This document shows positions 3,325 to 64,000 of a stretch of DNA of 64,000 bases, piece after piece. The stretch's first letter is position 1. Every line of letters begins with the position of its first letter. The notes below the pieces were generated by a model. The model did not search any database, had not been told where the DNA came from, and saw only the letters and a program-made list of their open reading frames with translations. The position numbers and the translations under genes were made by a program. The stretch lies in the sequence record KJ019103.1. One strand, 5' to 3'.

Positions 3325-3374
3325 GGTTATGTTGGGAAGAAACCCCAACCTCCTTTGTGATGTGGTGTTTGTTG

Positions 3375-3402
3375 GGGAAGGGGTGGTTCCCTTCCCTTTT
3401 TT
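3375..3402 (+). terminator. intrinsic terminator in mazG leader
   Basis: GGGAAGGG/CCCTTCCC stem then T6. Confidence 0.75.
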
Positions 3403-3426
3403 ATTGTTTATTGGTATTCAATTATT

Positions 3427-8870: not shown

Positions 8871-9318
8871 TCTAGAGCTAGAGTATCATCTTTATCTGGA
8901 TGGAAACCCTATTCAGACACTGAAGGATGACGCTAGTACAATGACTTTAGCCAAGAAGAGGGTTATTGGTCCTTACATTCGTAGAGCTGAATCTTTTATT
9001 AAAATATCAGAACCATTTAGGGAACTACTTCGTCTTGATGATGGTAAGGATAAACTTCTAGATGCAATAGGTGTTGTCTGGGCACACTACTTTGAACATA
9101 AGATTAACAAGAAGTATATGGTTATCCCTAAGGATGCATCTCTTGATTTTATGGAATACTTTGGTACTATGGTACAGAAGGATAAGTTTCCAGATGATAA
9201 ATATATTAAGAAAGCTCAGCGTATCATTCTCTCTCACGAAAAGAGTATTGATGCTTTCATTAAGGCTTTTCATAGTATCCGTTTAGCCAACGACAAATAT
9301 CTCTCCCTGAAGAAATGA
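8863..9318 (+). CDS. hypothetical protein
   Basis: ORF track; overlaps both neighbours. Confidence 0.75.
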   Translation: MDDLELEYHLYLDGNPIQTLKDDASTMTLAKKRVIGPYIRRAESFIKISEPFRELLRLDDGKDKLLDAIGVVWAHYFEHKINKKYMVIPKDASLDFMEYFGTMVQKDKFPDDKYIKKAQRIILSHEKSIDAFIKAFHSIRLANDKYLSLKK

Positions 9319-34464: not shown

Positions 34465-35463
34465 ATGAAAGCTTTAATCTCTGGTATAACTGGGCAGGAT
34501 GGATCCTATCTTGCTGAACTTCTACTGAAGAAGGGGTATGAAGTCCATGGTATTATTCGTAGAACCTCCTCGTTTAATACAGGAAGAATCGATCATATCT
34601 TCGATCAGTTACACCTCCACTACGGGGATTTGACTGACTCCCTGAACATAGTCTCTATCATTAAGGAAGTAGAACCTGATGAGATCTACAACCTAGGGGC
34701 ACAGAGTCATGTGAAAGTATCTTTCGAGGAACCTGAATATACAGCACAGACTGATGCTCTGGGGACCCTAAGAGTATTGGAGGCAGTTCGTCTCCTAGGT
34801 ATGACAGATAAGGTTCGTATCTACCAGGCATCCACTAGTGAGTTGTATGGGTTGGTACAAGAGACACCCCAGAAAGAAACAACACCTTTCTACCCACGAT
34901 CTCCATATGGTGTAGCTAAACTCTATGGATATTGGATTGTAAAGAACTATCGTGAGAGTTATGGGATGCACGCCAGTAGTGGTATTCTATTCAACCATGA
35001 GTCACCACGACGGGGTGAGACTTTCGTAACCCGTAAGATTACTAGGGGACTATCCCGTATTAGTACAGGACTACAGGATTGTCTATACCTAGGTAATCTA
35101 AACTCAAGACGAGATTGGGGTCATGCTGAAGACTATGTGGAGGCTATGTGGTTGATGTTACAACAGGAAACTCCTGATGACTATGTGATTGCCACAGGTA
35201 AAGAGTATTCAGTGAAGGACTTTGTAGAGGCATCTGCTGAATACTTTGGTATGAAGATTGAGTGGCAGGGTGAAGGATTGGATGAAGTGGGTATAGATAG
35301 ATTTACAAAGAAGGTTGTCGTTCGTGTGAGTGACAAATACTTCAGACCAGCAGAGGTTGAAACTCTCTGGGGTGATCCCACTAAGGCTAAAGAGGTATTG
35401 GGTTGGAAACCTAATCATACCTTTGCTTCCCTAGTAGAAGATATGTGTATCTACGGTCAGTAA
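34465..35463 (+). CDS. gmd: GDP-mannose 4,6-dehydratase
   Basis: [34 protein letters not shown]. Confidence 0.97.
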
Positions 35464-35465
35464 TT

Positions 35466-36392
35466 ATGGAAAAAGGTGCAACGGTAGCAGTATTTGGTTC
35501 GGGTGGATTGGCTGGAAGTGCCATCACCAGGGCACTCAGGTGTTCTTTTGGGGGGTATAAGATTCTTACTCCTAGGAGTAAAGAACTAGACCTAAGAGAA
35601 CAAGCAGATGTTCGTAGTTGGTTTAAGCATAACAAAGTTGATTATGTATTCTTAGCTGCTGCCTTAGTTGGTGGTATCATGGCTAACAAGACTAGAAAGG
35701 CAGAGTTCTTACATGACAATCTAATGATGCAGTGTAATGTAATTGACTCTGCATACTATAGTGGAGTGAAGAAACTTCTATTCCTAGGTACTTCTTGTAT
35801 CTATCCAGCAGGAAGGCACCATCCACTAGTGGAACATGAACTACTCACAGGACTATTAGAACCAACCAATGACGCATACGCAATCGCAAAGATCGCAGGG
35901 ATCAAACAATGTGACTTCTACCGAGAACAATATGGATTTGATGCTATCTCTATCATGCCTCCTAATCTATATGGTCCTGGAGATAATTTCAATGAGGGAT
36001 CAGGACATGTCCTCGCCTCATTGATGAATAGGTTTCACCTAGCGAAGGAAGCAGGTGCATCTAGAGTTGAATGTTGGGGTGATGGGACACCTATGAGGGA
36101 GTTCCTATATGTGGATGACTTAGCAGATGCTTCCTTATACTTTATGGATAGTTATAGTGAGTCTGGGCACATTAATACTGGGACTGGTAGGGATGTAACT
36201 ATCAAACAACTAGCGGAGACTATTGCTGATGTAGTTGGATACAAAGGTGAGATAGGTTGGGATACAACTAAACCCAACGGAAACCCAAGGAAACTACTTG
36301 ACAGCAGTAGGGCAAACCTGTTAGGATGGGAACCCAAGGTTAAATTTGAAGACGGAATCAAACTCACATACAACTGGTATCTAGCACAATGA
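35466..36392 (+). CDS. fcl: GDP-4-keto-6-deoxymannose epimerase/reductase (WcaG/Fcl, ColC-like)
   Basis: LFLGTSCIYP, YAIAKIAG, NLYGPGDNF, REFLYVDD. Confidence 0.93.
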   Translation: MEKGATVAVFGSGGLAGSAITRALRCSFGGYKILTPRSKELDLREQADVRSWFKHNKVDYVFLAAALVGGIMANKTRKAEFLHDNLMMQCNVIDSAYYSGVKKLLFLGTSCIYPAGRHHPLVEHELLTGLLEPTNDAYAIAKIAGIKQCDFYREQYGFDAISIMPPNLYGPGDNFNEGSGHVLASLMNRFHLAKEAGASRVECWGDGTPMREFLYVDDLADASLYFMDSYSESGHINTGTGRDVTIKQLAETIADVVGYKGEIGWDTTKPNGNPRKLLDSSRANLLGWEPKVKFEDGIKLTYNWYLAQ

Positions 36393-37582
36393 CAAAGATT
36401 ACAAATGGATATACGTGGCCTCTTATGAAGGACACTGTGACCAAGAGAGATAGGTTGAGGATGGCAAAGTTTATCCTCACCAGTGATAGACTAACACAAG
36501 GTAAAGAAGTTCGTAAGTTTGAGGAGCAGTGGAGTGAGTGGCTTGGAGTTAAACATTCTCTTTTTGTTAGCAGTGGCAGTACCGCTAACCTACTTCTTGT
36601 GTCTGCTTGGAAGGAATTATACGAGATCCCAGACCAGTCGAAAGTAATTGTACCTGCTTGTACTTGGGTAACTAATGTTGCTCCTATCATTCAGTGTGGT
36701 TTGACTCCAATCTTTTGTGACATCAACTTAGAAGACTACTCCTTTGATCTGGATAAACTACAGGATATTCGTGATGAATATCACGATGACATCAGAGGTA
36801 TCTTTGTTACTCACCTCCTAGGATTTCCTGCTAATGTGGAAAAGTTTCGTGATGTTTTCCCCGACGCTCATATTCTAGAAGATGTATGTGAGAGTCACGG
36901 AGCAGTCCTCCCTAGTGGTGATAAGGCGGGAACCTTTGATGTTGGTGGCACATTTAGTTTCTACTTTGGGCACCACATGACTACCATTGAAGGTGGTATG
37001 GTGAGTACTAATGATCCAGAACTCTATGATCTAATGAGAATGAAGCGTTCTCATGGGTTAGCGAGAGAATCACTATACTTTGAAACATACAAAGAGAAGT
37101 ATCCTGATGTAAATCCACAGTTTCTCTTCGTTACTGAGGGATATAACTTCCGTAATACTGATCTAGCTGCTGTATTAGGACAGTCTCAACTGAAGAGACT
37201 AGACAGTATGATTGGGATTCGTAACAGGAACTATGAGTTATACCAACAATTACTAAAGAAACACGAACATGACCTTACACATGAGTATGGTGGTTCTTTC
37301 TATATCCCCTCCACACAGGGGGATGTAAGTAGTTTCTGTTTTCCATTTGTAGTTGATAATATGCACTGCTATCTTAAGTTAAAAGAACTTCTAGAAGAAT
37401 ACTATGTTGAGTATCGACCTATTGTGAGTGGTAACCTCCTACGACAACCATTCTTGAGAGAATATTCTGCTGAGTGTCCCAAGGCAGATATAGCCCATGA
37501 AAAGGGACTATATATTGGGAATAATCACTTTGTAGATGAGTCTAACTTTCACATGCTAGATGAGATTTTGAGCCAACTTTGA
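36389..37582 (+). CDS. PLP-dependent sugar 3-dehydratase, ColD-like (DegT superfamily)
   Basis: SSGSTANLL, EDVCESHG, GTFSFYFGHHMTTIEGG with His at the usual Schiff-base Lys position. Confidence 0.85.
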   Translation: MTKITNGYTWPLMKDTVTKRDRLRMAKFILTSDRLTQGKEVRKFEEQWSEWLGVKHSLFVSSGSTANLLLVSAWKELYEIPDQSKVIVPACTWVTNVAPIIQCGLTPIFCDINLEDYSFDLDKLQDIRDEYHDDIRGIFVTHLLGFPANVEKFRDVFPDAHILEDVCESHGAVLPSGDKAGTFDVGGTFSFYFGHHMTTIEGGMVSTNDPELYDLMRMKRSHGLARESLYFETYKEKYPDVNPQFLFVTEGYNFRNTDLAAVLGQSQLKRLDSMIGIRNRNYELYQQLLKKHEHDLTHEYGGSFYIPSTQGDVSSFCFPFVVDNMHCYLKLKELLEEYYVEYRPIVSGNLLRQPFLREYSAECPKADIAHEKGLYIGNNHFVDESNFHMLDEILSQL

Positions 37583-37583
37583 T

Positions 37584-38378
37584 ATGACATTTTCATTTAA
37601 TCATATGGGCAACTTGGGGCATCTGGGAAACCAGATGTTTCAGTATGCCGCACTCATTGGTATGGGGGCTAAGCATGGGAGGAGTATTTGTATCCCCCAT
37701 AAACAAAGTTTTGGGCAATCATACTACCAGGATCTTCGTAGTAATATCTACGATGCTTTCAACCTCTCACCCAATGGTGTAGGTATCAGTAGGTTCCCCA
37801 CAGTTCAGGAAGGTAGTTTCCACTTTGATGAAAACTTATTTGAAAACCCACCAGAGGAGAACTGTAACCTCTATGGATTCTTCCAGAGTGAAAAGTGGTT
37901 CTCACATATCAAAGAAGGTATTAGGAAAGAGTTCACTCTAAAGGATGAGTACCGGGAAGTGGCACAACTGATGAGAGACCAACTCTCCGGTCAGGTTGTT
38001 GCTATTCATGTTCGTAGAACTGATTACCTATCCAATCCAAACCACGGAGCATTGGGGTTAGACTACTATGAGAAGGCGCTAGAGTTAGTTCCTAATAACC
38101 TCACAGTAGTTGTATTCACTGATGATCCAGAGTGGGCTAAAGAACAACCACTCTTCCCAGATGATAGGTTCTTTGTATCAGAGACAGACTGTCCCTATAC
38201 AGACCTTGCTCTTATGAGTATGTGTGATTATCATATTATCGCCAACAGTTCATACTCTTGGTGGGGTGCATACTTATCTGATAGTAAGAAAGTAATTGCT
38301 CCTAAACAGTGGTTTGGGGAACCACTTAAAACAAATAACCTGAAAGATCTTTATTGTGATGGGTGGGTGAAACTATGA
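37584..38378 (+). CDS. GT11 alpha-1,2-fucosyl/colitosyltransferase
   Basis: GHLGNQMFQY, GFFQSEKWF, HVRRTDY, NSSYSWWGA. Confidence 0.92.
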   Translation: MTFSFNHMGNLGHLGNQMFQYAALIGMGAKHGRSICIPHKQSFGQSYYQDLRSNIYDAFNLSPNGVGISRFPTVQEGSFHFDENLFENPPEENCNLYGFFQSEKWFSHIKEGIRKEFTLKDEYREVAQLMRDQLSGQVVAIHVRRTDYLSNPNHGALGLDYYEKALELVPNNLTVVVFTDDPEWAKEQPLFPDDRFFVSETDCPYTDLALMSMCDYHIIANSSYSWWGAYLSDSKKVIAPKQWFGEPLKTNNLKDLYCDGWVKL

Positions 38379-38998
38379 GTAACTTTGCAAGTGCTAAACA
38401 GTTTATCAAGAATGGTATTGATACACAACAGGAGTCTATCTCTGGTGGTGGCAGCACTATGGCTTCCACAGTTGCCTTCAGATACTTCCTACCAAAGTAT
38501 ATCAAACAGTATGGTATTGAGAGTATCTTAGACATTGGGTGTGGTGACTGGCATTGGATGTCTACTATCAGAGAAGAGTTTCCTGATGTAGACTATGAGG
38601 GATGGGATGCCTCTGAGGATATGATTAATCCCATGACTGAGAAGTATGGAACAGAGAATACCAGGTTTGAGGTAAAGGATATCATTGATAACAAGTATCC
38701 CAAAGTGGATTTGGTTATCGCTCGTGATGTTCTATTCCACCTCAAAGAAGATTACCTAAAGAAGGTTCTCAAGAATATCAGTAAGGCAGGTGTGAAGTAT
38801 CTACTAGCAACTACCTTCCCAGGTTTACCTAAGAACGAAGAACTCACTCCTAAGAAATATGACGGTTGGGGATTCAGACCAATCAATCTGGATATCGAGC
38901 CTTATAATATGAAAGATTATTGTATCAATGATTTCAAGGAAACCACAGCCCCCAACAGGGGGTATCATCGTCATGTGTATTTGTATGAGGTAAAATGA
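38375..38998 (+). CDS. class I SAM-dependent methyltransferase
   Basis: SGGGS, ILDIGCGD, DLVIARDVLFHL. Confidence 0.88.
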   Translation: MSNFASAKQFIKNGIDTQQESISGGGSTMASTVAFRYFLPKYIKQYGIESILDIGCGDWHWMSTIREEFPDVDYEGWDASEDMINPMTEKYGTENTRFEVKDIIDNKYPKVDLVIARDVLFHLKEDYLKKVLKNISKAGVKYLLATTFPGLPKNEELTPKKYDGWGFRPINLDIEPYNMKDYCINDFKETTAPNRGYHRHVYLYEVK

Positions 38999-39147
38999 AG
39001 ATCGAAATTGAACTCTCTAAAGATGTAGAATACAAAGGAGAGAAACTAGGTGAGTATATCTGGAACCTAGAAGAGGGAATTAATCATGTTACTGGTTTTG
39101 GTGATTCACTTGAGGAATGTTTTAAGGAAATTGTGAGGTTTAGATGA
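38995..39147 (+). CDS. small hypothetical protein (50 aa)
   Basis: Hand-translated; overlaps both neighbours. Confidence 0.55.
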   Translation: MKIEIELSKDVEYKGEKLGEYIWNLEEGINHVTGFGDSLEECFKEIVRFR

Positions 39148-39875
39148 AGAAAGTAGCTATTATCTTTATTGGAACAGGTAGATACCTAGAGTTTCTACCA
39201 AAGTATTATGAACAGGCAGAAGCAAACCTCTTCCCTGACAGACCCAAACACTACTATGTGTTTACTGATGGTGACTTAGGTAATGAACTACCTGACAATG
39301 TAACTGTATACGAACAGGAACATCTCCAATGGCCATACATCACCCTCTATCGTTTCGGTATTATCCAGAAACACCTAGAGGAGATTGAGAAGGAGTGTGG
39401 TTTCCTACTCTTTATGGATGCTGATACACAGGTAGTATCCCCTGTATCGTTCGATGAAGTATTCAGGAAGGGAAAACCCTATACAGGTGTTCATCACCCC
39501 TGCCACGCCCTGAATATGCCACCACACAATGAGTTTCCTGGTAGTCTAGAAACTAATACAGCATCCAAGGCAGCATGTAAACCTGGTGATGACTTCTCTG
39601 TATATTGGCAAGGTTGTGTATGGGGTGGAAACATAAAGGGTGCTCGTAAGATTATTGATACTCTCCACCACAGAACTAAACAAGATGAGGAGAATGGAAT
39701 CATTGCCAAGTGGCATGATGAAAGTCATATCAATAGATACTTCCTTGACAACAAAGATAAGGTGAATACCCTATCACCTAGTTTCGCATACCCAGAGTCC
39801 TTCACTGAGTATATGGAAGACTACGAACCTAAGATTGTACACCTAGCAAAAGAGAATTCTAAGTATCAGGTATGA
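39144..39875 (+). CDS. GT6 (ABO-type) glycosyltransferase
   Basis: IFIGTGRY, DAD, GCVWGG, WHDESHINRY. Confidence 0.92.
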   Translation: MKKVAIIFIGTGRYLEFLPKYYEQAEANLFPDRPKHYYVFTDGDLGNELPDNVTVYEQEHLQWPYITLYRFGIIQKHLEEIEKECGFLLFMDADTQVVSPVSFDEVFRKGKPYTGVHHPCHALNMPPHNEFPGSLETNTASKAACKPGDDFSVYWQGCVWGGNIKGARKIIDTLHHRTKQDEENGIIAKWHDESHINRYFLDNKDKVNTLSPSFAYPESFTEYMEDYEPKIVHLAKENSKYQV

Positions 39876-40495
39876 GTTACTTCACAGATTATGACAACGA
39901 ATTCACAGTATTCGAGGCACCAAAGAACGGGGGAACTACTCTCCGTCTTTGGATATACTACGCAGGAACAGGGGAGTTGGTGAAGTCAGCGGAGTCTGAA
40001 TACTACGCTGGCACTGGAGAAACATACAAACAACTCCAAGAGTGGGGTTATGTGAATGGGGAATACGAGAACCCCAAGACCCAGATGGTATGTATCAAGA
40101 GAGACCCTGTAGATAGGTTTGTAAGTGCCTTCTATGATAAGGTAATCAAAGAGGGGAGAATCAAAGTAACCATCGATGAGTTTCTCTCAAACTATGAAGA
40201 GATACTTGATAAGTCTACCCTCAAGATGAATGATGGTAAGACTAACTTCATGAAGTTTCACTTTGAGTCACAGACATATCACTTTGGTAAAGATAGAGAT
40301 CTATATCATAAGGTCTTTGATATCTCAGAGGTTGGTACTGGTCTGAAGAAGTATCTGGAGAGTAAGTGGAATATAGAACTACCTGATGTCCATGCTAGAA
40401 ATAGTGGTGGTGGTAGAAAGTTTGATCTCTCCAGGGGACAACTGAATAAGGTGAAGGAAATCTACACACAGGACTATTATAATGGCTGGTACTGA
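39872..40495 (+). CDS. sulfotransferase family 2
   Basis: PKNGGTTLR, RDPVDRFVSAF, HFESQ. Confidence 0.8.
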   Translation: MSYFTDYDNEFTVFEAPKNGGTTLRLWIYYAGTGELVKSAESEYYAGTGETYKQLQEWGYVNGEYENPKTQMVCIKRDPVDRFVSAFYDKVIKEGRIKVTIDEFLSNYEEILDKSTLKMNDGKTNFMKFHFESQTYHFGKDRDLYHKVFDISEVGTGLKKYLESKWNIELPDVHARNSGGGRKFDLSRGQLNKVKEIYTQDYYNGWY

Positions 40496-41267
40496 AGGAT
40501 ATATCCTGATAGGTATTGGTGATAGGTATCTACAGATGACAGAGAACCTCACTAAAACTCTAAAGAAACATGGAGATAATAGAGGATCCCTAACTATCAC
40601 AAGATCGGATAATAGGGAACTCTATAGTGAGTGCAACACTGAGTTTGAGAGGAATGGAACTCTACCTAAGATTACCTTAGATAGATACCTACCTTTTGAT
40701 CACAATATATTCCTAGATGCTGATATGTTATGTGTAGGTGATACACAACATGTATGGGATCTATTCAGGAGTAGTGATCAGTTTGTTCAACAGGTAGGAT
40801 GTTTGGGAAGAGATCCTAACTTCCACGCTCACCAGTATGAGAGTGAGTTGGGTTTTGAGATTCCTAGAGTCCATGGTGGTTGTATCTACATCAATAGAGA
40901 GAAACTAGACCCAGAGTTCTTTCCCTATATGAGAGAGTGTTTCCTAAACTATAAACAAATATTTCATAATAGTGGTCTAACCTATAAGAATAGTAGACCA
41001 GACCAACCACTATACGCTCTAGCAAATGGTATGTGGGGATTCAAACCTGTGGATCTATACACTAACCCTATCATGACTATTGTGAATGATAGTACCCCAC
41101 CCCCACTAGATAGTGTGTTCTTCAATAAGAAGAGGGGTCCTAAGTTAGATACTCCTGTTCCCTTTGTTCATGTATTCCGTGGAGAAGAGGGTATGTCTAA
41201 GGGTTATACTAGAGGTGACCAGAAGATGTTGTTGTCCCATTATGATTACTACCTGAACTATGAATAA
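40482..41267 (+). CDS. GT-A fold glycosyltransferase (GT8-like)
   Basis: IFLDADML, GGCIY, DQP. Confidence 0.7.
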   Translation: MAGTEGYILIGIGDRYLQMTENLTKTLKKHGDNRGSLTITRSDNRELYSECNTEFERNGTLPKITLDRYLPFDHNIFLDADMLCVGDTQHVWDLFRSSDQFVQQVGCLGRDPNFHAHQYESELGFEIPRVHGGCIYINREKLDPEFFPYMRECFLNYKQIFHNSGLTYKNSRPDQPLYALANGMWGFKPVDLYTNPIMTIVNDSTPPPLDSVFFNKKRGPKLDTPVPFVHVFRGEEGMSKGYTRGDQKMLLSHYDYYLNYE

Positions 41268-42048
41268 AACTATATGGATGTGTTGGTTCCAGGGTTGGGA
41301 TAAGGCACCAGAGATTACAGAGAAGTGTTTAGAGTCCTGGAAACACTACAATAGTGATTGGGATATTGTTCTACTAGATGAATCCAACTACAAGGATTAC
41401 ATCTCCATTGATAAAGAACTACCAGGACTGAAGACAAACTATATCTCACTGGGTGATATCCTTCGTCTCTTTCTACTAAAAGAGCATGGTGGAGTATGGG
41501 CAGATGCAACTATCTTCTGCAACAAACCAGTGGATTGGGTTTTGGATTATGAGGATTCTTTCATCTTCACCAGGAAGGATAAGATGATTGCCTCTTGGTT
41601 TGTTGCTGCTCAGAAAGATTCTCATGTTGTAGATGTATGGTATAATAAGATGTTAGAGTTCTGGAAGTATCGTATGGAAAATACAGATACTTTCGAGCAA
41701 CAATATGGTTGGATACACGCTTTGTTCCGTCAGTCCTACGCTCAGGATAAGGGGTTCAGGGATATTGTAGATAGTATGGATAAGATTGATTGCATGAGTG
41801 ATGGTCAATCTAGAGGTAAGGGTCCGCACTTCTTTGCACCCTACAGTAAATACTTCTACAACCCTATCAGTGACACGATAAAGAATCGTATAGACTCTAA
41901 AGTTGATCCACTATATAAGTTGTCTTACAAGGCAAACACAGACTGGAGAAGTCCAGAGAACAGGGGTATCCACCCAGCAGACCAAAAGATTATGTTGGAA
42001 TATCCAACTAATAGTGAACTACATTATCTACTCAACACATTAAAATGA
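41260..42048 (+). CDS. GT32/capsular polysaccharide synthesis-type glycosyltransferase
   Basis: KTIWMCWFQG, DILRLFLLKEHGGVWADAT. Confidence 0.88.
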   Translation: MNKTIWMCWFQGWDKAPEITEKCLESWKHYNSDWDIVLLDESNYKDYISIDKELPGLKTNYISLGDILRLFLLKEHGGVWADATIFCNKPVDWVLDYEDSFIFTRKDKMIASWFVAAQKDSHVVDVWYNKMLEFWKYRMENTDTFEQQYGWIHALFRQSYAQDKGFRDIVDSMDKIDCMSDGQSRGKGPHFFAPYSKYFYNPISDTIKNRIDSKVDPLYKLSYKANTDWRSPENRGIHPADQKIMLEYPTNSELHYLLNTLK

Positions 42049-42950
42049 CAAATAAATCATTGGTTACCGGTGGCGCGGGTTTCATCGGGTCACATATTGT
42101 GGACCGACTTATTACACTAGGACATCAAGTCGTAGTGATTGACAATGAATCCTCTGATGGTCATGATGAATACCATTGGAACAGAAGCGGACAAGTACAA
42201 AACCATAAGGCAGACATTCGTGACTACGATGCAATCAAACACTTGTTTGGTGGAGTCAATAATGTTTTTCACCTTGCCGCTAAAGCATCAGTACAGGCGT
42301 CAGTAGATAACCCCCTACCAACTATTGCCACACAGGTAATGGGAACCGCCAATGTATTGGAGGCAGCACGACAATCTGGTGTGAGTAAGTTTGTATATTC
42401 CTCTACTAGTGCTTGTTATGGTAACAACAACCCCATTCCTAATGTAGAAACGATGAGAGAAGATCCTCTCAACGCCTATGCTATTGGTAAGTTATCTGGG
42501 GAACAACTAGTTCGTGCCTATCACTACCTCTATGGTATGAAGACGGTGGCATTCCGTTATACCAATGTATATGGGGAGAGGGCAAGACATGTAGGACACT
42601 ATGCTCCTGCTGTTAGTAAGTTCCTAAAGATGAGAGCACAGGGAGAACCCCTAACTATCTTTGGTGATGGTGCCCAACGCCGGGACTTTATTCATGTATC
42701 TGATGTAGTCAACGCTAACTGCTGTATTACCTATGAGGAACTAGAGCAGTGGGGTGAGACCTATAACATTGGTTATGGTAAGAACTGGAGTATCCAAGAG
42801 ATCGCAGACTCTATCAGTCAGGAACAGATTCACCTATCTGCTCGTACTGGTGAGATGCGTGAGACGCTTGCTGATATTGGGAAGGCAAAGGCAGAGTTGA
42901 TGTGGAAACCAAAGACTGACATCATGGATTGGATTAGGGTACAACTCTGA
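42045..42950 (+). CDS. NAD-dependent nucleotide-sugar epimerase/dehydratase
   Basis: VTGGAGFIGSH, YAIGK, RDFIHVSD. Confidence 0.92.
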   Translation: MTNKSLVTGGAGFIGSHIVDRLITLGHQVVVIDNESSDGHDEYHWNRSGQVQNHKADIRDYDAIKHLFGGVNNVFHLAAKASVQASVDNPLPTIATQVMGTANVLEAARQSGVSKFVYSSTSACYGNNNPIPNVETMREDPLNAYAIGKLSGEQLVRAYHYLYGMKTVAFRYTNVYGERARHVGHYAPAVSKFLKMRAQGEPLTIFGDGAQRRDFIHVSDVVNANCCITYEELEQWGETYNIGYGKNWSIQEIADSISQEQIHLSARTGEMRETLADIGKAKAELMWKPKTDIMDWIRVQL

Positions 42951-43567
42951 TGCCAGTATTTCAGAAGGACAACAAGAAAGTTCTATTCATCCATGTTCCC
43001 AAGACTGCAGGAAGTTCTGTGAATAAACTCTTTGTGAATAATGGATATGAAATGTCCTACTATTCTGAGAGTTCTAAAGATCTATACAATGGATTATGTG
43101 GACCACAACATCTGGACTCACTTCTATTGGAAGATGAGTTCCAAGATTTCTCTCAGTTTGATTATATCTTCTCTATCTTCAGAGACCCAGTAGACAGACA
43201 TCTATCTGAGTTCACCTGGGCACCCTGGGGACTAATGGGTAGAAACATCTACACACCAGAAAGATTTGATGAGTGGTGTCCTAAGATATTCAGAGCGTAT
43301 CAGGACTCACCATATAGGATGGATAATCACATTAGACCTCAACATGAGTTCTATGTCAATGGATGTGATGTGTATGACTATGAAAATATCAATACACTCA
43401 CAGAGAAACTATGTGATAAAATAGGTCTAGATAATAAAGAGATGCCATATGAAAGGTCTTCACGATATGATAGTGAGGATTATGTCATCTATGAAGATAC
43501 TTACAATTGTATTACTGAATTTTACAAAGGAGACTATCAATGGCAAAAGGATTCAGTCCTGTTGTGA
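42950..43567 (+). CDS. sulfotransferase family 2
   Basis: FIHVPKTAGSS, RDPVDRHLSEF, HIRPQ. Confidence 0.85.
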   Translation: MPVFQKDNKKVLFIHVPKTAGSSVNKLFVNNGYEMSYYSESSKDLYNGLCGPQHLDSLLLEDEFQDFSQFDYIFSIFRDPVDRHLSEFTWAPWGLMGRNIYTPERFDEWCPKIFRAYQDSPYRMDNHIRPQHEFYVNGCDVYDYENINTLTEKLCDKIGLDNKEMPYERSSRYDSEDYVIYEDTYNCITEFYKGDYQWQKDSVLL

Positions 43568-44418
43568 CTAAGGATAAGAACAAGTCCCAGTTCAAACTAC
43601 AGGGTGTTCCTAGGATTTACTACATCAGTTTAGATGATCATGCTCATCGTCAAGACTATATGGAGTCCCAGTTTGAAGACTGGGGCATCACTAACTTCGA
43701 AAGAATCTCTGCTCATGATGGTAGAGGTGATAATGATCTGAGTGATATTCTCAAAGGATCTTATCCAAAGATGATGACTTCTGGTGAGGTTGGTTGTGTG
43801 ACCTCTCACCTAAAGGCACTCAAACACTGGTTAGATACTACAGAGGATGAAGAGTTTCTCCTTATGATGGAGGATGATTGTGATATCTCCACTGCTGCCC
43901 ACTGGGGTTTCTCCTGGAGGGAGTTTGTTGGGAATGTTCCATCCCATGTAGATTGTGTTCAGTTGGCAGTTATCAATCCAGCAGAACTACACATCAAAAT
44001 CCATATCAGGTTTGTGAATGATTTCTCCACTGCCTCATACCTAATCCGTAGATCACACGCGGAGAAGTTAGTTAGACTCTATTGTAGGGGTGATAAGTAT
44101 AAACTTGATAGTGATATCAAACCCAGAGCAGTTGCTGACGATCTTATCTACAACTCTGGTGTGACTCTTGCTATGCCACTGTTTGCATACAAGATCGCAC
44201 TAGGTTCCAGTATCCATGATGTCCATATCAATACCTTCCACAAGAGTAGTCATGATGGTATCTGGGAGTTTTGGAAGAAAACAGCACCAACTATTGATAA
44301 CTGGAAACCATTCTTCAACTATGATGCCTATCTGGGAACCCTACCACCCAATGTTGTGGTTCAACAATGGCAGCAAAAACAGGAATCCAAGGCAAAAGAT
44401 TCAGGGGCTTCGCAATAG
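43540..44418 (+). CDS. GT25 glycosyltransferase
   Basis: YYISL...R...SAHDG...GEVGCVTSH...MEDD. Confidence 0.85.
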   Translation: MAKGFSPVVTKDKNKSQFKLQGVPRIYYISLDDHAHRQDYMESQFEDWGITNFERISAHDGRGDNDLSDILKGSYPKMMTSGEVGCVTSHLKALKHWLDTTEDEEFLLMMEDDCDISTAAHWGFSWREFVGNVPSHVDCVQLAVINPAELHIKIHIRFVNDFSTASYLIRRSHAEKLVRLYCRGDKYKLDSDIKPRAVADDLIYNSGVTLAMPLFAYKIALGSSIHDVHINTFHKSSHDGIWEFWKKTAPTIDNWKPFFNYDAYLGTLPPNVVVQQWQQKQESKAKDSGASQ

Positions 44419-57882: not shown

Positions 57883-58257
57883 ATGAATACATATGGTTCT
57901 CCCGAAGGTTATCTCTTTAACCTTCATACCTGCTCAGCATCAGAAGCGAAGCGAATGTGGAAAGAATCTATAAAGAATGATTGGAAACATAAATGTGCTT
58001 ATTGTGGATCGGAACATGAAATTACTTTAGATCATATAGTACCCAAAGCGAAAGGGGGTACTAGTCATACAACCAATGTCGTAGCTTGTTGTCGTTCTTG
58101 TAACGGGAGTAAGGCATATGAGGATTGGATTATCTGGTATATTCAACAGCCATTCTTCACTGAAGAGAGGAGGGAGGCTATTGAAAAGTGGATGGAGAAG
58201 GGCCTCCTCAACAATAACTTAGTTGCATATCCACCCAGAAGAAATGTCGTTTATTGA
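57883..58257 (+). CDS. HNH endonuclease
   Basis: CAYCG...TLDHIVPKAKGG...NVVACCRSCNGSK. Confidence 0.93.
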   Translation: MNTYGSPEGYLFNLHTCSASEAKRMWKESIKNDWKHKCAYCGSEHEITLDHIVPKAKGGTSHTTNVVACCRSCNGSKAYEDWIIWYIQQPFFTEERREAIEKWMEKGLLNNNLVAYPPRRNVVY

Positions 58258-58392: not shown

Positions 58393-58473
58393 AACCTTTC
58401 AGTTCAGGCGATATAAATAAACCTAAGAAGAGTATATGCGTTCTTCGTCGGATAGCCTGAATCGACAAAAGAG

Positions 58474-61400
58474 ATGATCTCAACAGCGACTAAGATTAAA
58501 TTTAAAAGGTCTGGTGTAGCCGGACGTAGACCCTCCTTAGCTGATCTTCAGTTAGGTGAATTGGGGATCAATTATAACGATGGTAAACTATTTTTCCGAC
58601 AGGAAAATGAAGTAGTTGGCTCTCGTATCATTGAACCTGGACAGGGTGATGTAATCGGTAAGACTATTTTCGTATCCACAAAGGGTAACGATAACAATAG
58701 TGGTCTTAACGAAAGAGATGCCAAGAGAACTGTTAAAGCGGCCGCCGCAGTAGCAGAACCTGGTGACTCCATCAAACTGTATCCAGGTCAGTACATCGAA
58801 GATAACCCTATCGTATTTAAGGATAGGGTATCTGTAGAGGGTATGGAGCTTCGTAACGTTCTCGTTACTCCAGCCAACCCCAGTAAAGACTTGTATCAAG
58901 TTGGTGAGGCGTTCCACGCTACCAACCATTCCTTTGTGTCCAATAGGGATTCAACAGATGGTGCCTCTATTATCACCTATCGTCCTCTAGAGGGAACTGC
59001 GTCTGACAGGTATTTTGACGCGGCTAGACTCATCAGGGACAATCTTAGCTTCATTGCTAACGAGACAGTAGGTTTCCTAACCAGTGGATATTCAGGCTTT
59101 GCCGCTGGTCAGAGATCACAGGACGCTGCTCGTGCTCTAGAACTAAACAAGAACTTCATAGTAGAAGAAGCATTTCAATATATCAACTCTCCTGATTATA
59201 CAGGAGCCACATACTTCAACCCAGACCCAGCACAGTGTAAGAGAGACCTAGGAAATATCATTGATGGTTGGAGATATGATCTCATCTCTGATGGTAACAC
59301 CAGATCTACTGGTCTTGGTCTAACCTACTACGCACCTATTCCCTTTGTGAATAGTGCTAATGTTGCTGACCTTGTATACAACAGAAATAACGGTGATGTT
59401 CTAATTGAAACCGACGTAGATACACAGGTTTCAGTTGGTGAGAAGATCAAACTACAGGATATCAGACTAGAGTGTGGTTCCTACAATAACGACTTCTTTA
59501 TCACTGGTTTCAAGTATGATAACACCAGTGGTATTGGAACAGTTAATCTACCCTTTATCCATAACGTCAAGGTTGGAGACCTTGTTAAGTTTGATGGTTT
59601 AGAGTTTGATTGTCCTGCCTATGGTGCCATTGAATATGGTATCCAAGACTTCAAGTATAATGAAACTACTGGTGGAAGTGTTGTCACACTCACCGAAGAT
59701 CATGATCTAAAGATTGGTGACACCATTGAACTAAGAGACCTTCAGTTCGATTGTCCCGCCTATGGTGGTGACTTCACTAACATCATCAACCTAGAATACA
59801 ATAAGACCAGTGGTCAGGGTGTTATCACATATGACAAACCCGCCGATCTCAAGTCTGGTGACGTTGTTATCCTCTATGACCTCACACTAACTTGTGATGC
59901 TTATGGTAACGCTATCTCAGTTACTGATTTCTCTTATGATAACTTCACTGGTATCACTGAAGTAGAAGTAAATAGACCCCACAACCTCCGTCCCGGAGAC
60001 CTAATCAAACTAGAGAACCTTAAGTTCTCTTGTGATTCCTACCTTAATGAAACATACAAGGTCTCTAACTTTGTATATAATGAGAGCACTGGTGATAGTG
60101 TCCTCACCCTAACTGAACCACATAGTTTAGTTGCTGGTAAGAACGTCAGACTTGCTGACCTAGTTTTCTCCTGTAACTCCTATGTTCCAACCGCTAAAGC
60201 AATCTCTGATTTCCAGTATGATGAAGTAGTTGGTATCTCTACTATTACTCTAGCATCTCCACACAACTTATCAGTTGGTGAGCAGTTCAGACTAGAGGAT
60301 TTAGTATTCTCCTGTAACTCATATTCCTTCACTGATATTCCTATCATTGATGCACCATATGATAATGTAACTGGTTATGTAACCCTATCGTTCTCTGGTG
60401 ACCACGGACAACAGGTTGGTGAGAGAGTAAGACTCAGAGATATTGAGTACTCCTGCCCTGGTGGTTCAGGTATCACTACAACCTTGTTCCCCGATGGAAC
60501 CTTTGGTTATGAGTTTGAAATCCTAAGTGTTCCAAACACTAAGAAGATGATTCTTAATGTTGGCACCTCCACTATTGAACACTCCTATGTGAGTGGTGGT
60601 ACTGCTACCGTTGGTATTACAACTACTATCTTCCCTGATGGAACACAAGGTTTCGACTTCAATGTATCCAGTGTTAATAGTTCCACTGTTATCGAAGCAA
60701 GTGTTGGTATTTCTACCATCGCTCACAACTATGTTTCTGGTGGATCATTATTCGTTGGTTTCACTACCACAGTATTCCCCGATGGAACACAAGGTGATAC
60801 CTTCAGAGTTAATTCTATTCCTTCTAGCACTCAAATCAGTGTTAATGTTGGTGTATCTTCTATCGCCCATACTTTCGTATCCGGTGGTACAGCAACTGAC
60901 CTAGACTCTTTCATCCCTGTATCTGGTTTCACCTACAATGAAGGTGACGGAACTGGACTAGTATCCCTAGACAAGGCACACAACCTAGTGGTTGGTGACT
61001 CTTTTGTTCTAGAGGATCTTAAGTTCAACTGTAACTCCTACAGAACAGGTGGTACTTCTACTATTGATATCACTAACTTTGAGTATGATAAGGTAACCGG
61101 ACTATCTACAGTCACACTATCTTCTTCACACAACCTACATGTTAATGATACCGTAGCACTATATGATATCAAGTTCTCTTGTCCTGGTGGTTCAGGTATT
61201 ACAACTAATATCTTCCCCGATGGAACCAGAGACAACTTCTATGATGTAGTTGCTGACCTAAACCCCAACCAGATTATTGTTCGTGTTGGTAAGTCTGACA
61301 TTACTCACACATACGCTAGTGGTGGTAGTCTATCCGTTGGTATCACTACTAACATCTTCCCTGATGGAACTAGACCTTCTGGTGACTTCTTCCAGGTTAT

Positions 61401-64000
61401 CTCTGTTCCTTCTACCAAGTCTGTTCTAACTCAGGTTGGTCTATCCTCTATCGCTCACTCATACGCAAGTGGTGGTAAGTTCTACACTGGTATCACTACT
61501 AATGTATTCCCACAGGTATTCACCGACCCCAACATCAAGGTAACCAACGCTGTATATGACGAAGTATCTGGTGTTATCACCATTACTACTAACAAGGCAC
61601 ACGGACTTACCGCTACCGCACCTGTTCTACTACAGGATCTAAACTTCTCTTGCCTCTCTGGTGGTGTAGGAAACACCCCAGGCAACCTTGTGTTCCCCAG
61701 GAACCAGGAAGTTTATGATGTTGTGTCCGTTCTATCTACTACACAATATACGATCAATGTAGGTCCTTCTGACTTCGCTCACGCATATGTTGATGGTGGT
61801 ACTTCTACCACACAGAACATCACTAAGGCATCCTACAACAAAGGAACTGGTGATCTAACAGTAACCCTAGACAAGCAACACGGTTATTCAGTTGGTGATC
61901 GTGCTAGTGTGGTTGATCTCCTCTTCTCCTGTCAGTCTGGTGGTCCTAACAACCAACCTGGAACACTTCTATTCCCCAGACCTACTGATGAGTATGAAGT
62001 TCTATCTGCAAGTGGTAAGACACTCACAGTTAATGTTGGAGCGTTCCCATCACTAGTTCATACCTATAAGAATGGTGGATCACTAACCTATAGTTCTACT
62101 GTACTTCCTGTAAGTAACGCAGTTTATGATCAATCAACTGGAGTTCTAACACTTACCACATCAATTGCACTAGGGGCACCTGTTGGTTCTACCATTAAGA
62201 TGCAGGGTCTAAACTTCTCCTGTGCCTCTGGTGGTCCTGGTAATGACGCTGGTGCTATTGTATTTCCAAGACTAGACACTCCTACCTTCAAGGTTAAGGA
62301 AGTCAAGAGTGGTGTATCCTATGTTATCAATGTAGGAACCTCTACACTCTCACACACATATACATCTGGTGGTTTCTCCTCACTCAAGAAGTTGAAGAAC
62401 GACCCCAATATTTTCAAAGTTATCGACACCCCAACACCTAGTAAGGTTATTACTAATGTAGGTGTCTCATCTATCGCTCATGACTATGTGAGTGGTGGTA
62501 ATATGTTCGTGGGTATCACCACTAATGTATTCCCTGATGGAACTCGCCCTGATGGAAGTAGGTTCGAAGTTATCTCCGCCCTATCACCCAACCAGGCACT
62601 CATCAACATCGGTGTTTCTACTATCACCCACAACTACGATAGTGGTGGTAGGATGCAGTATGGTACTACCAATGAGAGACCTGTTCTAGACTTCCTATAC
62701 GATGGTCAGACTGGTATCTCCACTGTAACTATTAGAGGAACTCATGGTTTGAACCAGGGTGACCTAGTGAAACTCAGAGGTCTTGAGTTCGCTTGTACTA
62801 ACTCACCTGGTATTACAACTACTATCTTCCCAGATGGAACTGCCGCTGGTCTCAATATCTACAAGGTTACTGAGATTATTAGTAACAGTACCTTCAAGAC
62901 AAATGTAGGTAGAGTTGGATTCGATCATACTTACATCCAAGGTGGTTCCGCTTTCGTTGGTATCACTACTAACATCTTCCCAGATGGAACACAAGGTTAC
63001 AACTATACAGTTGCCGCCATTCCTAATAAGAATCAGGTAACAGTTGATGTGGGTATCTCCAGTATCCAACATGATTATATTCGTGGTGGATCACTATTCT
63101 CTGGTAAGACTAACGAGAGAGATATCGCAGACTTCAAGTATGATCACATCTCTGGTGATGCGGTTCTTACCTTCAGAAAGGCACAGAACTTATTCACACA
63201 AGATCTAGTAAAACTTAAGAACCTTCAGTTTGATTGTCCAAACTCTACTGGTATCACTACTACTCTCTTCCCAGACGGAACCAGAAGTAACCTCTTCCTA
63301 ATCAAGGAGAGACTAAACCCAACACAGTTCAAACTCAATGTTGGCACTTCACCATTCGGTCATGACTATGTGAGAGGAACAGGTCAGGCATTCGTTGGTA
63401 TCACTACTAACATCTTCCCTGATACCAAGACACAACCAAGTAAGTTATTCAAGGTTGTTGATGTCCCAACTCCTACTACTATCTCCGCCAAGATTGGTGT
63501 ATCCACTATCTCCCACTCATATGTTAAGGGTGGTAAGGTATTCGTTGGTATTAACACTGATATCTTCCCTGGAGATGAGCAAGTATCACCACTAGGTGAC
63601 ACATATACAGTTCAGAGTATCACTAAAGATGGTGAGTTGGTTATCAATGTTGGACTATCTTCTATCAGTCACTCCTATGGTGGCGGTGGTAAGGTTCTAT
63701 ATGGACAGAGTTCTGGTAACAACCTACAACATATCACTGGTCCTGGTGTCCTAGATGCAACCATCGCCGCTGTGGACTTCGAGAAACAGGTAGCAATCAA
63801 CGCACTAAACAACAGACCTTGGGGTTCATTCGTTCCTGAAGAGACTGCTGTTGTGGAGGCGTTCGCCTATGATAACCAGACTGGTTTCGGAACAGTAACT
63901 GCTAGAGGAATCAACGTCAACACTGGTGACACCATCAGAATGAGTGACATTCAGTTTGTTTGTTCTGAGGAATACGCAGGTGTAACCACTACCTTCTTCC
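58474..64000 (+). CDS. giant late virion fibre/structural protein, 3' partial (at least 1842 aa)
   Basis: Late promoter 58412; N-term IKFKRSG...GELGINYNDGKLF; FVSTKGNDNNSG...PGQYIEDNP; repeat body hand-translated without stops from 59341 to the end, in frame with ATG58474. Confidence 0.9.
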   Translation, partial: MISTATKIKFKRSGVAGRRPSLADLQLGELGINYNDGKLFFRQENEVVGSRIIEPGQGDVIGKTIFVSTKGNDNNSGLNERDAKRTVKAAAAVAEPGDSIKLYPGQYIEDNPIVFKDRVSVEGMELRNVLVTPANPSKDLYQVGEAFHATNHSFVSNRDSTDGASIITYRPLEGTASDRYFDAARLIRDNLSFIANETVGFLTSGYSGFAAGQRSQDAARALELNKNFIVEEAFQYINSPDYTGATYFNPDPAQCKRDLGNIIDGWRYDLISDGNTRSTGLGLTYYAPIPFVNSANVADLVYNRNNGDVLIETDVDTQVSVGEKIKLQDIRLECGSYNNDFFITGFKYDNTSGIGTVNLPFIHNVKVGDLVKFDGLEFDCPAYGAIEYGIQDFKYNETTGGSVVTLTEDHDLKIGDTIELRDLQFDCPAYGGDFTNIINLEYNKTSGQGVITYDKPADLKSGDVVILYDLTLTCDAYGNAISVTDFSYDNFTGITEVEVNRPHNLRPGDLIKLENLKFSCDSYLNETYKVSNFVYNESTGDSVLTLTEPHSLVAGKNVRLADLVFSCNSYVPTAKAISDFQYDEVVGISTITLASPHNLSVGEQFRLEDLVFSCNSYSFTDIPIIDAPYDNVTGYVTLSFSGDHGQQVGERVRLRDIEYSCPGGSGITTTLFPDGTFGYEFEILSVPNTKKMILNVGTSTIEHSYVSGGTATVGITTTIFPDGTQGFDFNVSSVNSSTVIEASVGISTIAHNYVSGGSLFVGFTTTVFPDGTQGDTFRVNSIPSSTQISVNVGVSSIAHTFVSGGTATDLDSFIPVSGFTYNEGDGTGLVSLDKAHNLVVGDSFVLEDLKFNCNSYRTGGTSTIDITNFEYDKVTGLSTVTLSSSHNLHVNDTVALYDIKFSCPGGSGITTNIFPDGTRDNFYDVVADLNPNQIIVRVGKSDITHTYASGGSLSVGITTNIFPDGTRPSGDFFQVISVPSTKSVLTQVGLSSIAHSYASGGKFYTGITTNVFPQVFTDPNIKVTNAVYDEVSGVITITTNKAHGLTATAPVLLQDLNFSCLSGGVGNTPGNLVFPRNQEVYDVVSVLSTTQYTINVGPSDFAHAYVDGGTSTTQNITKASYNKGTGDLTVTLDKQHGYSVGDRASVVDLLFSCQSGGPNNQPGTLLFPRPTDEYEVLSASGKTLTVNVGAFPSLVHTYKNGGSLTYSSTVLPVSNAVYDQSTGVLTLTTSIALGAPVGSTIKMQGLNFSCASGGPGNDAGAIVFPRLDTPTFKVKEVKSGVSYVINVGTSTLSHTYTSGGFSSLKKLKNDPNIFKVIDTPTPSKVITNVGVSSIAHDYVSGGNMFVGITTNVFPDGTRPDGSRFEVISALSPNQALINIGVSTITHNYDSGGRMQYGTTNERPVLDFLYDGQTGISTVTIRGTHGLNQGDLVKLRGLEFACTNSPGITTTIFPDGTAAGLNIYKVTEIISNSTFKTNVGRVGFDHTYIQGGSAFVGITTNIFPDGTQGYNYTVAAIPNKNQVTVDVGISSIQHDYIRGGSLFSGKTNERDIADFKYDHISGDAVLTFRKAQNLFTQDLVKLKNLQFDCPNSTGITTTLFPDGTRSNLFLIKERLNPTQFKLNVGTSPFGHDYVRGTGQAFVGITTNIFPDTKTQPSKLFKVVDVPTPTTISAKIGVSTISHSYVKGGKVFVGINTDIFPGDEQVSPLGDTYTVQSITKDGELVINVGLSSISHSYGGGGKVLYGQSSGNNLQHITGPGVLDATIAAVDFEKQVAINALNNRPWGSFVPEETAVVEAFAYDNQTGFGTVTARGINVNTGDTIRMSDIQFVCSEEYAGVTTTFF
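59350..63690 (+). repeat. 30 half-domain protein repeats (15 type A, 15 type B), each about 47-49 aa
   Basis: A: DFxYD..TG...H.L..GD.V.L.DL.FxC; B: GITT.IFPDGT...NVG.S.I.HxYV.GG. Confidence 0.88.

What the first reader, a model, noticed from the sequence alone, without database searches (positions are those of the whole stretch)
59350..63690. Giant fibre gene encodes a balanced-parenthesis array of nested half-domains, implying a branched protein tree
Seen: the repeat order is A8, B3, A2, B2, [first part of B, then AB AB AB, then rest of B], B, A, B2, A, B3. Counting A as open and B as close, depth runs 8,5,7,5,4,3,4,3,2,3,2,1,0. It is never negative and closes at exactly 0 (15 A, 15 B). Uninterrupted units read A-C-PGGS-GITT-B, so A+B is one domain of about 95 aa with an insertion point between C-x-x-Y and GITT. 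The split B carries DPNI on both sides of its insert. The array sits between a helical segment (CKRDLGNII...DGNTRS..Y) and a helix (TIAAVDFEKQVAINALNN) that may complete it. Inference: domains were inserted recursively into each other's loop, giving an 8-deep stalk with side branches rather than beads on a string, e.g. a dendritic receptor-binding or glycan-capturing appendage. I know of no description of this architecture, but did not search.
Basis: partly seen in the sequence, partly recalled or inferred. Interest (0 to 1): 0.87.

Follow-up and report, generated by a model that had tools for sequence, protein, structure and literature searches.

The report
Recursively nested barrel domains, cyanophage fibre
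A giant tail-fibre-like protein of a marine Synechococcus phage seems to be built from about 31 small beta-barrel domains inserted one inside another up to eight deep, so that its half-domains read like balanced brackets, an arrangement kept across hundreds of relatives and apparently not described before.

Summary
The window is Synechococcus phage ACG-2014f. The gene starts at 58474, runs off the window and encodes a 3,967-aa 'hypothetical protein'.

The whole protein has 31 A and 31 B, and depth returns to zero seven times.

In 118 relatives the A and B counts correlate at r=0.99. Copy-number differences between orthologues are balanced (AB, A2B2, A3B3).

A+B is best read as one six-stranded FCCH-like barrel:
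- AlphaFold forms the third strand of an A only when a matching B is present.
- Residue couplings seen in adjacent A-B pairs recur in distant nested pairs and vanish when partners are swapped.

Relatives with 'empty sites' show two further levels of nesting. The array sits inside a helical module, and that module sits inside a split beta-helix.

No contact map could be inspected, so which A pairs with which B is inferred. The branched 3-D shape and a receptor- or glycan-binding role are untested.

I found no prior description. The nearest precedent is the nested SBHM array of cyanobacterial RNA polymerase Si3.

The parts
58412..58419 (+). TATAAATA, matching the T4-type late promoter consensus, 54 nt upstream of the start codon
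   Evidence: 8 copies in the window, all on the + strand (3.96 expected over both strands). One also lies upstream of the annotated tail fiber gene (45278). Late expression is inferred.
58474..64000 (+). First 1,842 codons of the 3,967-aa giant gene (Syn7803US44_263); it runs off the window
   Evidence: Full-length match to phrog_3442 (unknown function) and to phrog_17885 'tail fiber protein'.
58489..58617 (+). N-terminal fibre-attachment-type motif (aa 6-48)
   Evidence: phrog_35830 'long tail fiber protein distal subunit', E 5.5e-7. Relatives carry Pfam Mtd_N (PF18454).
58681..58851 (+). Start of a right-handed beta-helix-like domain (aa 70-126); the rest lies about 3,450 aa downstream, outside the window
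   Evidence: DUF1565 positions 2-61, 17.4 bits, below the cut-off of 20.3; in P0194 and P0170 the homologous N part and C part are contiguous.
59029..59343 (+). First half of the helical host module (aa ~186-290), phycobiliprotein-like
   Evidence: weak in the query, above cut-off in relative P0194. Searches show it is completed by aa 1741-1793.
59359..60042 (+). Trunk: A1-A5 (aa 296-523), first halves of barrels 1-5. Their B halves lie at 61486-63693.
   Evidence: In both AlphaFold jobs these A copies, predicted without their B partners, form only the first hairpin.
60061..60891 (+). Branch 1: A6 A7 A8 B1 B2 B3 (aa 530-806), three nested barrels
   Evidence: 3-4 strands per A and pLDDT about 77-80 with the B copies present; at most 2 strands and pLDDT 49-66 without them.
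60916..61479 (+). Branch 2: A9 A10 B4 B5 (aa 815-1002), two nested barrels
61486..61536 (+). First piece of the split B that closes A5 (aa 1005-1021, ends in DPNI)
61540..62373 (+). Three tandem variant AB barrels (aa 1023-1300) inserted in the FP loop of the split B
   Evidence: P0020 has four copies here.
62401..62502 (+). Second piece of the split B (aa 1310-1343, starts with DPNI)
62509..63693 (+). Closing series: B (closes A4), tip AB, B (closes A3), tip AB, B (closes A2), B (closes A1); aa 1346-1740
   Evidence: stack matching, corrected by hand.
63694..63852 (+). Second half of the helical host module (aa 1741-1793)
   Evidence: aligns with positions 63-89 of the contiguous paralogous module (E 1e-4); in P0131 and P0134 it directly follows the first half.
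63853..63999 (+). Next barrel: A16 and the start of its B (aa 1794-1842), cut by the window end

Best explanation
The gene encodes a late, tail-fibre-like virion protein. Its bulk is made of about 31 small six-stranded beta-barrels of the E1-FCCH type.

A is the first half of a barrel (a hairpin plus a third strand). B is the second half (a conserved GITT..FPDG loop plus three strands). The two ends of a barrel lie together, so a whole barrel, or a string of barrels, can sit in a loop of another barrel. The usual site is the A|B junction. Less often it is the FP loop or a later loop of B, or the loop after the His of A.

Repeating this gives stalks up to eight barrels deep with side branches. 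On the sequence this reads as a balanced-bracket word.

The word must close because each tree is itself an insertion. It sits in a loop of a helical (phycobiliprotein-like) module, and that module sits inside a split beta-helix-like domain.

Consecutive barrels in a stalk are joined by two chain crossings instead of one. That should make a stiffer projection than beads on a string.

Shown here:
- the grammar and its conservation;
- balanced copy-number changes;
- empty sites in relatives;
- dependence of A on B in structure prediction;
- couplings specific to the nested pairing.

Inferred:
- the exact A(i)-B(i) contacts;
- the 3-D branching;
- presence in the virion;
- a spacer or adhesin (host-surface or glycan-binding) role.
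For: Grammar:
- The whole protein has 31 A and 31 B once the degenerate tip at aa 2220-2310 and the 11-residue B piece are counted. Depth returns to 0 after aa 1740, 1883, 2567, 2855, 3001, 3189 and 3508.
- In 118 relatives, A versus B counts give r=0.994. Counts are exactly equal in 66. Of 56 distinct words, 25 are strict Dyck words, against 3.6 expected under token shuffling and 13.1 under run-length shuffling.
- Outside the close orthologues there are 41 distinct Dyck words.

Balanced changes between orthologues:
- AB / A2B2 / A3B3;
- AB / A2B2 inside the split A;
- (AB)3 / (AB)4;
- a long form versus a short form that differ by the contiguous block A3B3A2B2.

One domain:
- Pfam E1_FCCH (70 positions) aligns to exactly one contiguous A+B in P0008 at 29.1 bits, cut-off 29.5.
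- Foldseek gives repeated probability-1.0 hits to Uba1, UBA6 and UBA7 and to a phage protein annotated 'FCCH domain containing'.

AlphaFold:
- 5 of 5 A copies with partners have at least 3 strands.
- 10 of 10 A instances without partners have at most 2 strands.
- A6-A8 drop from pLDDT about 80/77/79 to 49/58/66 when B1-B3 are left out.

Couplings:
- A29-B16 and A33-B15 (third A strand against first B strand) recur in non-adjacent nested pairs, at ranks 6 and 52 of 1,978.
- They vanish when partners are swapped within the same hairpin; 0 of 100 swaps reach the true value.
- Coupling-map correlation is 0.187 for the true pairing against 0.129 +/- 0.006 for swaps.

Conservation of matched halves correlates: r=0.50, p=0.002 for all pairs; r=0.41, p=0.04 for nested pairs only.

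Empty sites are shown.

Fibre identity:
-;
- relatives carry Mtd_N, Peptidase_S74 and six CBM_5_12 modules;
- late-promoter motif.
Against: - No contact map or PAE could be read. pTM is low (0.35), so the models do not show which A touches which B.
- The pLDDT control is not clean: the unmatched A4 and A5 also fall between the two jobs.
- The alignment fed to AlphaFold holds only 25 orthologues.
- The query itself has no Pfam hit, and the FCCH match in a relative is just under the cut-off.
- Foldseek TM-scores are low.
- Automated parsing leaves about half of the relatives off balance by 1-4. I attribute this to fragments and to a divergent B subtype that my HMM misses, but I did not fully resolve it.
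- Couplings and rate correlations can be inflated by shared ancestry.
- There is no proteomic or imaging evidence that the protein is in the virion.
Confidence: 0.7

Rival explanations
1. Fold-back rod with pairing between chains. The halves do complement each other, but in an oligomeric (for example trimeric) fibre the A halves of one chain are completed by the B halves of a neighbouring chain (domain swapping). Balance would then reflect stoichiometry rather than a tree within one chain.
For: The N-terminus is of the trimeric tail-fibre type (Mtd_N in relatives). Many phage fibres are intertwined trimers (general knowledge). The AlphaFold jobs were monomeric with low pTM, so they cannot exclude this.
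Against: Pairing between chains needs equal counts but not the non-crossing order. Yet A runs precede their B runs, and sub-blocks close locally. Tip pairs are joined by 0-9 residues, so they must be within one chain. Side branches cannot all lie on one three-fold axis.
Confidence: 0.12
2. Beads on a string. A and B are two independent small repeat types. Equal numbers result from co-duplication or chance, and no domain is split.
For: A-only and B-only runs exist (A8, B5). Some distant relatives parse as A-rich. The chance of a 15+15 Dyck word is 1/16.
Against: A copies without B lack their third strand in 10 of 10 predicted instances. An FCCH profile spans A+B. Balance and balanced indels hold across relatives. 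Nested-pair couplings are lost on swapping. The A-rich words are explained by a B subtype that my HMM misses.
Confidence: 0.06
3. Two-layer sheet or solenoid. The A run and the B run each form a continuous layer, and the two layers pack against each other as an antiparallel hairpin. There are no discrete barrels and no true branching.
For: Periods are similar (A about 47 aa, B about 48-50 aa). Low pTM leaves the overall geometry open.
Against: Isolated AB units exist as single copies, and as inserts in loops, in many relatives. This argues for a self-contained domain. The E1 FCCH hits also point to a barrel.
Confidence: 0.08

Closest known systems
Si3 insertion of cyanobacterial RNA polymerase beta' (eight SBHM domains in the trigger loop)
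   Same: An array of small beta domains that is itself an insertion in a loop of another domain. The chain 'folds over itself', and four of the eight domains are built from distant parts of the sequence (PMC10895346, read). It is an elongated projection.
   Different: The fold is different (SBHM, not FCCH-like). It has eight domains and about four discontinuous ones, against 31 domains, depth 8 and side branches here. It is an enzyme accessory rather than a virion protein. No family-wide bracket rule with balanced copy-number changes has been reported for it. It is an analogue in architecture; homology was not tested.
E1 ubiquitin-activating enzyme FCCH domain, and FCCH-type decoration domains of siphophage tail tube proteins
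   Same: A six-stranded antiparallel Greek-key barrel that occurs as an added or inserted, outward-facing domain (PMC13576161). It is the best structural match of the AB unit.
   Different: There it occurs as single copies. Here it forms a recursive array. The sequence match is at or below Pfam's cut-off.
Beads-on-a-string Ig-like, FN3 or BACON arrays on phage fibres and capsids (for example T4 Hoc; from my own knowledge)
   Same: Many small beta domains on a virion surface protein, thought to give reach and weak glycan adhesion.
   Different: Those domains are contiguous and joined by single linkers. Here the halves are separated by up to about 1,350 residues, and each stalk joint has two chain crossings.
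Receptor-binding tip of T4 long tail fibre gp37, where the chains run to the tip and fold back (from my own knowledge; not compared with tools)
   Same: A fold-back topology in a phage fibre.
   Different: That is a single fold-back of an intertwined trimer, not nested globular domains. No sequence or fold match was returned here.

Membership tests
E1_FCCH-type six-stranded beta-barrel (Pfam PF16190) | Sequence match above Pfam's gathering score | tested here: not met
   The query and seven AB units give no PF16190 hit. Relative P0008 scores 29.1 bits against a cut-off of 29.5, aligned over one A+B.
E1_FCCH-type six-stranded beta-barrel (Pfam PF16190) | Six-stranded antiparallel barrel fold | tested here: inconclusive
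   AlphaFold gives 3 strands in a tip A plus 3 in its B. Foldseek gives probability about 1.0 to Uba1, UBA6 and UBA7, but with rmsd 6-8 A and low TM. Coordinates could not be inspected.
E1_FCCH-type six-stranded beta-barrel (Pfam PF16190) | Behaves as an insertable module (ends adjacent) | tested here: met
   Complete AB units lie inside loops of other repeats at aa 1005-1343, 1983-2123, 3052-3189 and 3365-3508.
Phage tail fibre (T4-like / Mtd_N-type N-terminus) | N-terminal attachment motif shared with known tail fibres | tested here: met
   phrog_35830 at aa 6-48, E 5.5e-7; phrog_17885 and phrog_5342 'tail fiber protein'. Relatives are annotated tail fiber or baseplate wedge.
Phage tail fibre (T4-like / Mtd_N-type N-terminus) | Present in the virion, attached to the baseplate, oligomeric | not testable with these tools
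   No proteome or image is available. The only support is a late-promoter-like motif.
Right-handed beta-helix tailspike-like domain (DUF1565 / pectate-lyase-like) | Profile match over the helix | tested here: inconclusive
   Only the first 60 profile positions match, at 17.4 bits against a cut-off of 20.3. The C part has no Pfam or PDB hit. The N and C parts are contiguous in P0194 and P0170.
Phycobiliprotein (PF00502), for the helical host module | Profile match above the gathering score | tested here: not met
   The query scores 13.8 bits against 22.2, and its best PDB hits are phycocyanin alpha at E 0.1. Relative P0194 passes at 27.7 bits and hits 22 phycoerythrin beta chains.
Nested SBHM array (RNA polymerase Si3) | SBHM fold or homology | not tested
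   No SBHM hit was returned by the Pfam, PDB or Foldseek searches. It is cited only as an architectural analogue.

The most novel reading that the evidence does not exclude
This family shows a previously unrecognised way to build large proteins. One small barrel is inserted into itself again and again, so the polypeptide follows a bracket (context-free) grammar. It would fold into a true tree of 31 domains, nested inside a phycobiliprotein-like module, which is nested inside a beta-helix. The result would be a stiff, branched appendage on an abundant marine virus. Selection keeps the brackets balanced whenever copy number changes.
Probability: 0.5. Interest if true: 0.88.

Novelty: new variant of a known kind. 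Interest (0 to 1): 0.8.

Why it matters
Domain insertion is known, but almost always one or two levels deep. A family in which one domain is nested up to eight deep, with branches, and in which the rule is readable from sequence alone, would offer three things.

- A natural test bed for how discontinuous domains fold, since the first half must wait for more than 1,300 residues.
- A way to annotate giant 'hypothetical' phage proteins that defeat standard domain tools. Pfam returns nothing for this 3,967-aa protein.
- A candidate explanation for how cyanomyoviruses build long, stiff host-recognition structures.

It also warns that repeat finders which treat A and B as separate repeats will misread such proteins.

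Tried and rejected
- Sequence searches of the whole protein, the AB profile and the C-terminal part against Pfam and the PDB gave nothing usable.
- The first AlphaFold job was lost on the remote machine (954 aa, meant to include A5 with its distant split B). I replaced it with a 567-aa job plus an A-only control.
- pLDDT as a matched-versus-unmatched measure proved confounded, because A4 and A5 also drop between jobs. I rely on strand counts instead.
- Tandem Repeats Finder found no DNA-level array, so recent expansion or assembly artefact is rejected.
- DPNI as a target-site-like duplication is only partly conserved in orthologues. I do not treat it as a mechanism.
- My B HMM, even after iteration, misses a divergent B subtype in distant relatives. 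The 'A-only' words there were therefore not used as evidence either way.
- The two 498-aa genes in the window are not paralogues.
- Five literature searches for a prior description of nested arrays in phage fibres found none. This is a limited library, not proof of absence.

Disclosure 1: while interpreting the Pfam phycobilisome hit, I recalled a short phycobiliprotein motif from memory in my reasoning. The report relies only on the alignments the tools printed.

Disclosure 2: once, while thinking about DPNI conservation, I looked at and quoted short bits of a consensus line that align_proteins prints by itself. I then dropped it, computed per-column shares, and used the line for no result.

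Full report
WHAT IS THERE

The window is 100% identical to Synechococcus phage ACG-2014f isolate Syn7803US44, a T4-like cyanomyovirus of the Kyanoviridae. The finding lies in a single open frame that starts at the ATG at 58474 and runs off the window end. In the record it is Syn7803US44_263, 11,904 nt or 3,967 aa, annotated 'hypothetical protein'. So the window holds only its first 1,842 residues.

Pfam finds nothing in it, and PDB sequences find nothing. PHROGs gives a full-length match to an unnamed family. It also gives matches to 'tail fiber protein' families, including an N-terminal motif (aa 6-48) shared with long tail fibre distal subunits.

A T4-type late-promoter consensus (TATAAATA) lies 54 nt upstream. 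All eight copies in the window are on the coding strand, and one precedes the annotated tail fiber gene.

CHECKING THE OBSERVATION

I built HMMs for A (43 positions) and B (46 positions) from the sequence itself. The junction motifs and the DPNI on both sides of the split are as described. DPNI is only partly conserved in orthologues.

There are no DNA-level tandem repeats. The copies are therefore old and diverged, not a recent expansion or an artefact.

THE BALANCE EXTENDS BEYOND THE WINDOW

In the full protein the array continues: AB; then A A [split A holding AB] A A, a degenerate tip AB, B5; A3B3; AB; A [split B holding AB]; A [split B holding AB]. Counting the degenerate tip and the short B piece gives 31 A and 31 B. 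Depth returns to zero seven times. Whole AB units sit inside loops of another A or B four times, so AB is an insertable unit.

RELATIVES

A search returned 120 giant relatives, and an AB profile finds 506 cluster representatives among 1.84 billion proteins.

- Across 118 parsed relatives, A and B counts (2-33 copies) correlate at r=0.994.
- Counts are exactly equal in 66 of them.
- Of 56 distinct words, 25 are strict Dyck words, against 3.6 expected from token shuffles and 13.1 from run-length shuffles.
- Outside the close orthologues there are 41 different Dyck words, some intricate.

More telling, differences between orthologues are balanced. These include AB / A2B2 / A3B3, AB / A2B2 inside the split A, and (AB)3 / (AB)4. 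A short form lacks exactly the contiguous block A3B3A2B2.

About half of the automated parses are off by 1-4. I traced part of this to gene fragments and part to a divergent B subtype that my HMM misses. This is a caveat, not a resolved point.

IS A+B ONE DOMAIN?

- In relative P0008, the 70-position Pfam E1_FCCH profile aligns to exactly one contiguous A+B. It scores 29.1 bits against a cut-off of 29.5.
- An AlphaFold model of aa 436-1002 is all-beta (mean pLDDT 74.8, pTM 0.35), with three strands in a tip A and three in its B.
- Its only consistent PDB matches, at probability about 1.0 but low TM, are E1 enzymes Uba1, UBA6 and UBA7.
- In the viral library it matches cyanophage 'tail fiber', 'baseplate wedge initiator' and an 'FCCH domain containing' protein.

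FCCH is a six-stranded Greek-key barrel already known as an outward-facing decoration on siphophage tail tubes (PMC13576161).

DOES A NEED B?

In the aa 436-1002 model, A4 and A5 have partners that lie outside the segment. They form only their first hairpin. A6-A10 have partners present and show 3-4 strands each.

A second job with A1-A8 alone (mean pLDDT 56.1, pTM 0.19) gives at most two strands for every A. A6-A8 fall from pLDDT about 80/77/79 to 49/58/66.

In total, 5 of 5 partnered A copies are complete and 10 of 10 unpartnered instances are not. The number of completed A copies equals the number of B copies supplied. That is what nesting predicts, and it is not what tip-only pairing predicts. 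The pLDDT comparison is not clean, because A4 and A5 also drop. No contact map could be read.

RESIDUE-LEVEL SUPPORT

Mutual-information couplings were learned on adjacent (tip) A-B pairs. The couplings A29-B16, A33-B15, A13-B29 and A31-B15 recur in non-adjacent nested pairs, at ranks 6, 52, 58 and 115 of 1,978. They disappear when partners are swapped inside the same hairpin.

These columns are the third strand of A and the start of the first strand of B. That is the same strand AlphaFold forms only when B is present.

The whole coupling map agrees better with the true pairing than with swaps: 0.187 against 0.129 +/- 0.006, with 0 of 200 swaps reaching the true value. Conservation of matched halves across 23 orthologues also correlates: r=0.50, p=0.002 overall, and r=0.41, p=0.04 for nested pairs only. 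These tests are modest and can be inflated by shared ancestry.

HIGHER LEVELS OF NESTING

- A contiguous paralogous helical module at aa 3190-3321 aligns colinearly with the segment before the array (aa 248-286) and the helix after it (aa 1758-1784). An 11-residue gap marks the insertion site.
- In relatives P0131 and P0134 the two halves are adjacent.
- The N-terminal beta-helix-like start (aa 70-126, weak DUF1565 match) and the C-terminal part (about aa 3590-3700) are contiguous in P0194 and P0170.

So the order of nesting is beta-helix, then helical module, then barrel trees. This explains why each tree must close: the chain has to return to its host loop.

Many small relatives (0.7-2 kaa; for example P0141 with (AB)3 and P0176 with A2B2) share the same N and C frame around a small array.

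FUNCTION

Fibre identity rests on several lines:
- the PHROG matches;
- the annotations of relatives;
- Mtd_N, Peptidase_S74 and six CBM_5_12 modules in relatives;
- the late-promoter motif.

I infer a spacer or adhesin role, and greater stiffness from the double connection between stacked barrels. Neither is shown.

NOVELTY

Five searches of the paper library found no description of this architecture. The nearest precedent is the Si3 insertion of cyanobacterial RNA polymerase. [quoted passage not shown]

I therefore rate this a new variant of a known kind. It stands out for its depth, its branching and a family-wide bracket rule.
Noticed in passing
window 59029-59343 and 63694-63852 (aa ~186-290 and 1741-1793); relative P0194 aa 305-348 and 465-516: The helical module that hosts the barrel tree looks phycobiliprotein-like. 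P0194 passes Pfam Phycobilisome (27.7 bits, cut-off 22.2) and hits 22 phycoerythrin beta chains in the PDB. The query's aa 204-275 has phycocyanin alpha 27-103 as its best PDB match, including a conserved C-x-R-D, but at E 0.1. A light-harvesting-type fold in a cyanophage fibre would be curious.
   Followed up: partly
window 58681-58851, and L001:22525-23901 (outside the window): A beta-helix-like domain appears split by about 3,450 residues. Its two parts are contiguous in relatives P0194 and P0170.
   Followed up: partly
window 16224, 17442, 19392, 45278, 54290, 55055, 56274, 58412: There are eight TATAAATA motifs, all on the + strand (3.96 expected over both strands). Several lie just upstream of genes, including the annotated tail fiber gene and the giant gene. 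They are probable T4-type late promoters.
   Followed up: partly
window 57883-58257: A small HNH endonuclease gene (phrog_2214, E 1.6e-37) lies directly upstream of the giant gene. It may be a homing endonuclease.
   Followed up: partly
window 34465-44418: The record annotates a run of sugar-nucleotide and glycosyltransferase genes: GDP-mannose 4,6-dehydratase, epimerases, GT families 11, 6 and 25, and a heptose epimerase. This is a sizeable glycan-building cassette for a phage, not far from the fibre genes.
   Followed up: no
window 7971-8870, 12203-12976, 14656-15537; 9315-12176 and 16249-17463: The record annotates three DNA adenine methylase genes and two genes named 'cytitidyltransferase' (one of 953 aa), clustered together with a sigma-70-type gene.
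   Followed up: no
relative P0067 (2,429 aa): This member of the A/B family carries six CBM_5_12 carbohydrate-binding modules (E 4.8e-32). That links the family to glycan binding.
   Followed up: partly
L001:23909-24256 (just downstream of the giant gene, outside the window): A 116-aa gene belongs to phrog_1276, the same PHROG that matches A/B repeats inside the giant protein (E 8.1e-19). It may be a free-standing piece of the same repeat family.
   Followed up: no
all B copies, e.g. window 60466-60507: The most conserved stretch of B (GITT..FPDG) is predicted as a low-confidence loop rather than a strand (pLDDT about 46-59). One Cys in A and one His in B are invariant in all seven tip units. 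No role is known; it could be an inter-domain joint or a metal or ligand site.
   Followed up: no
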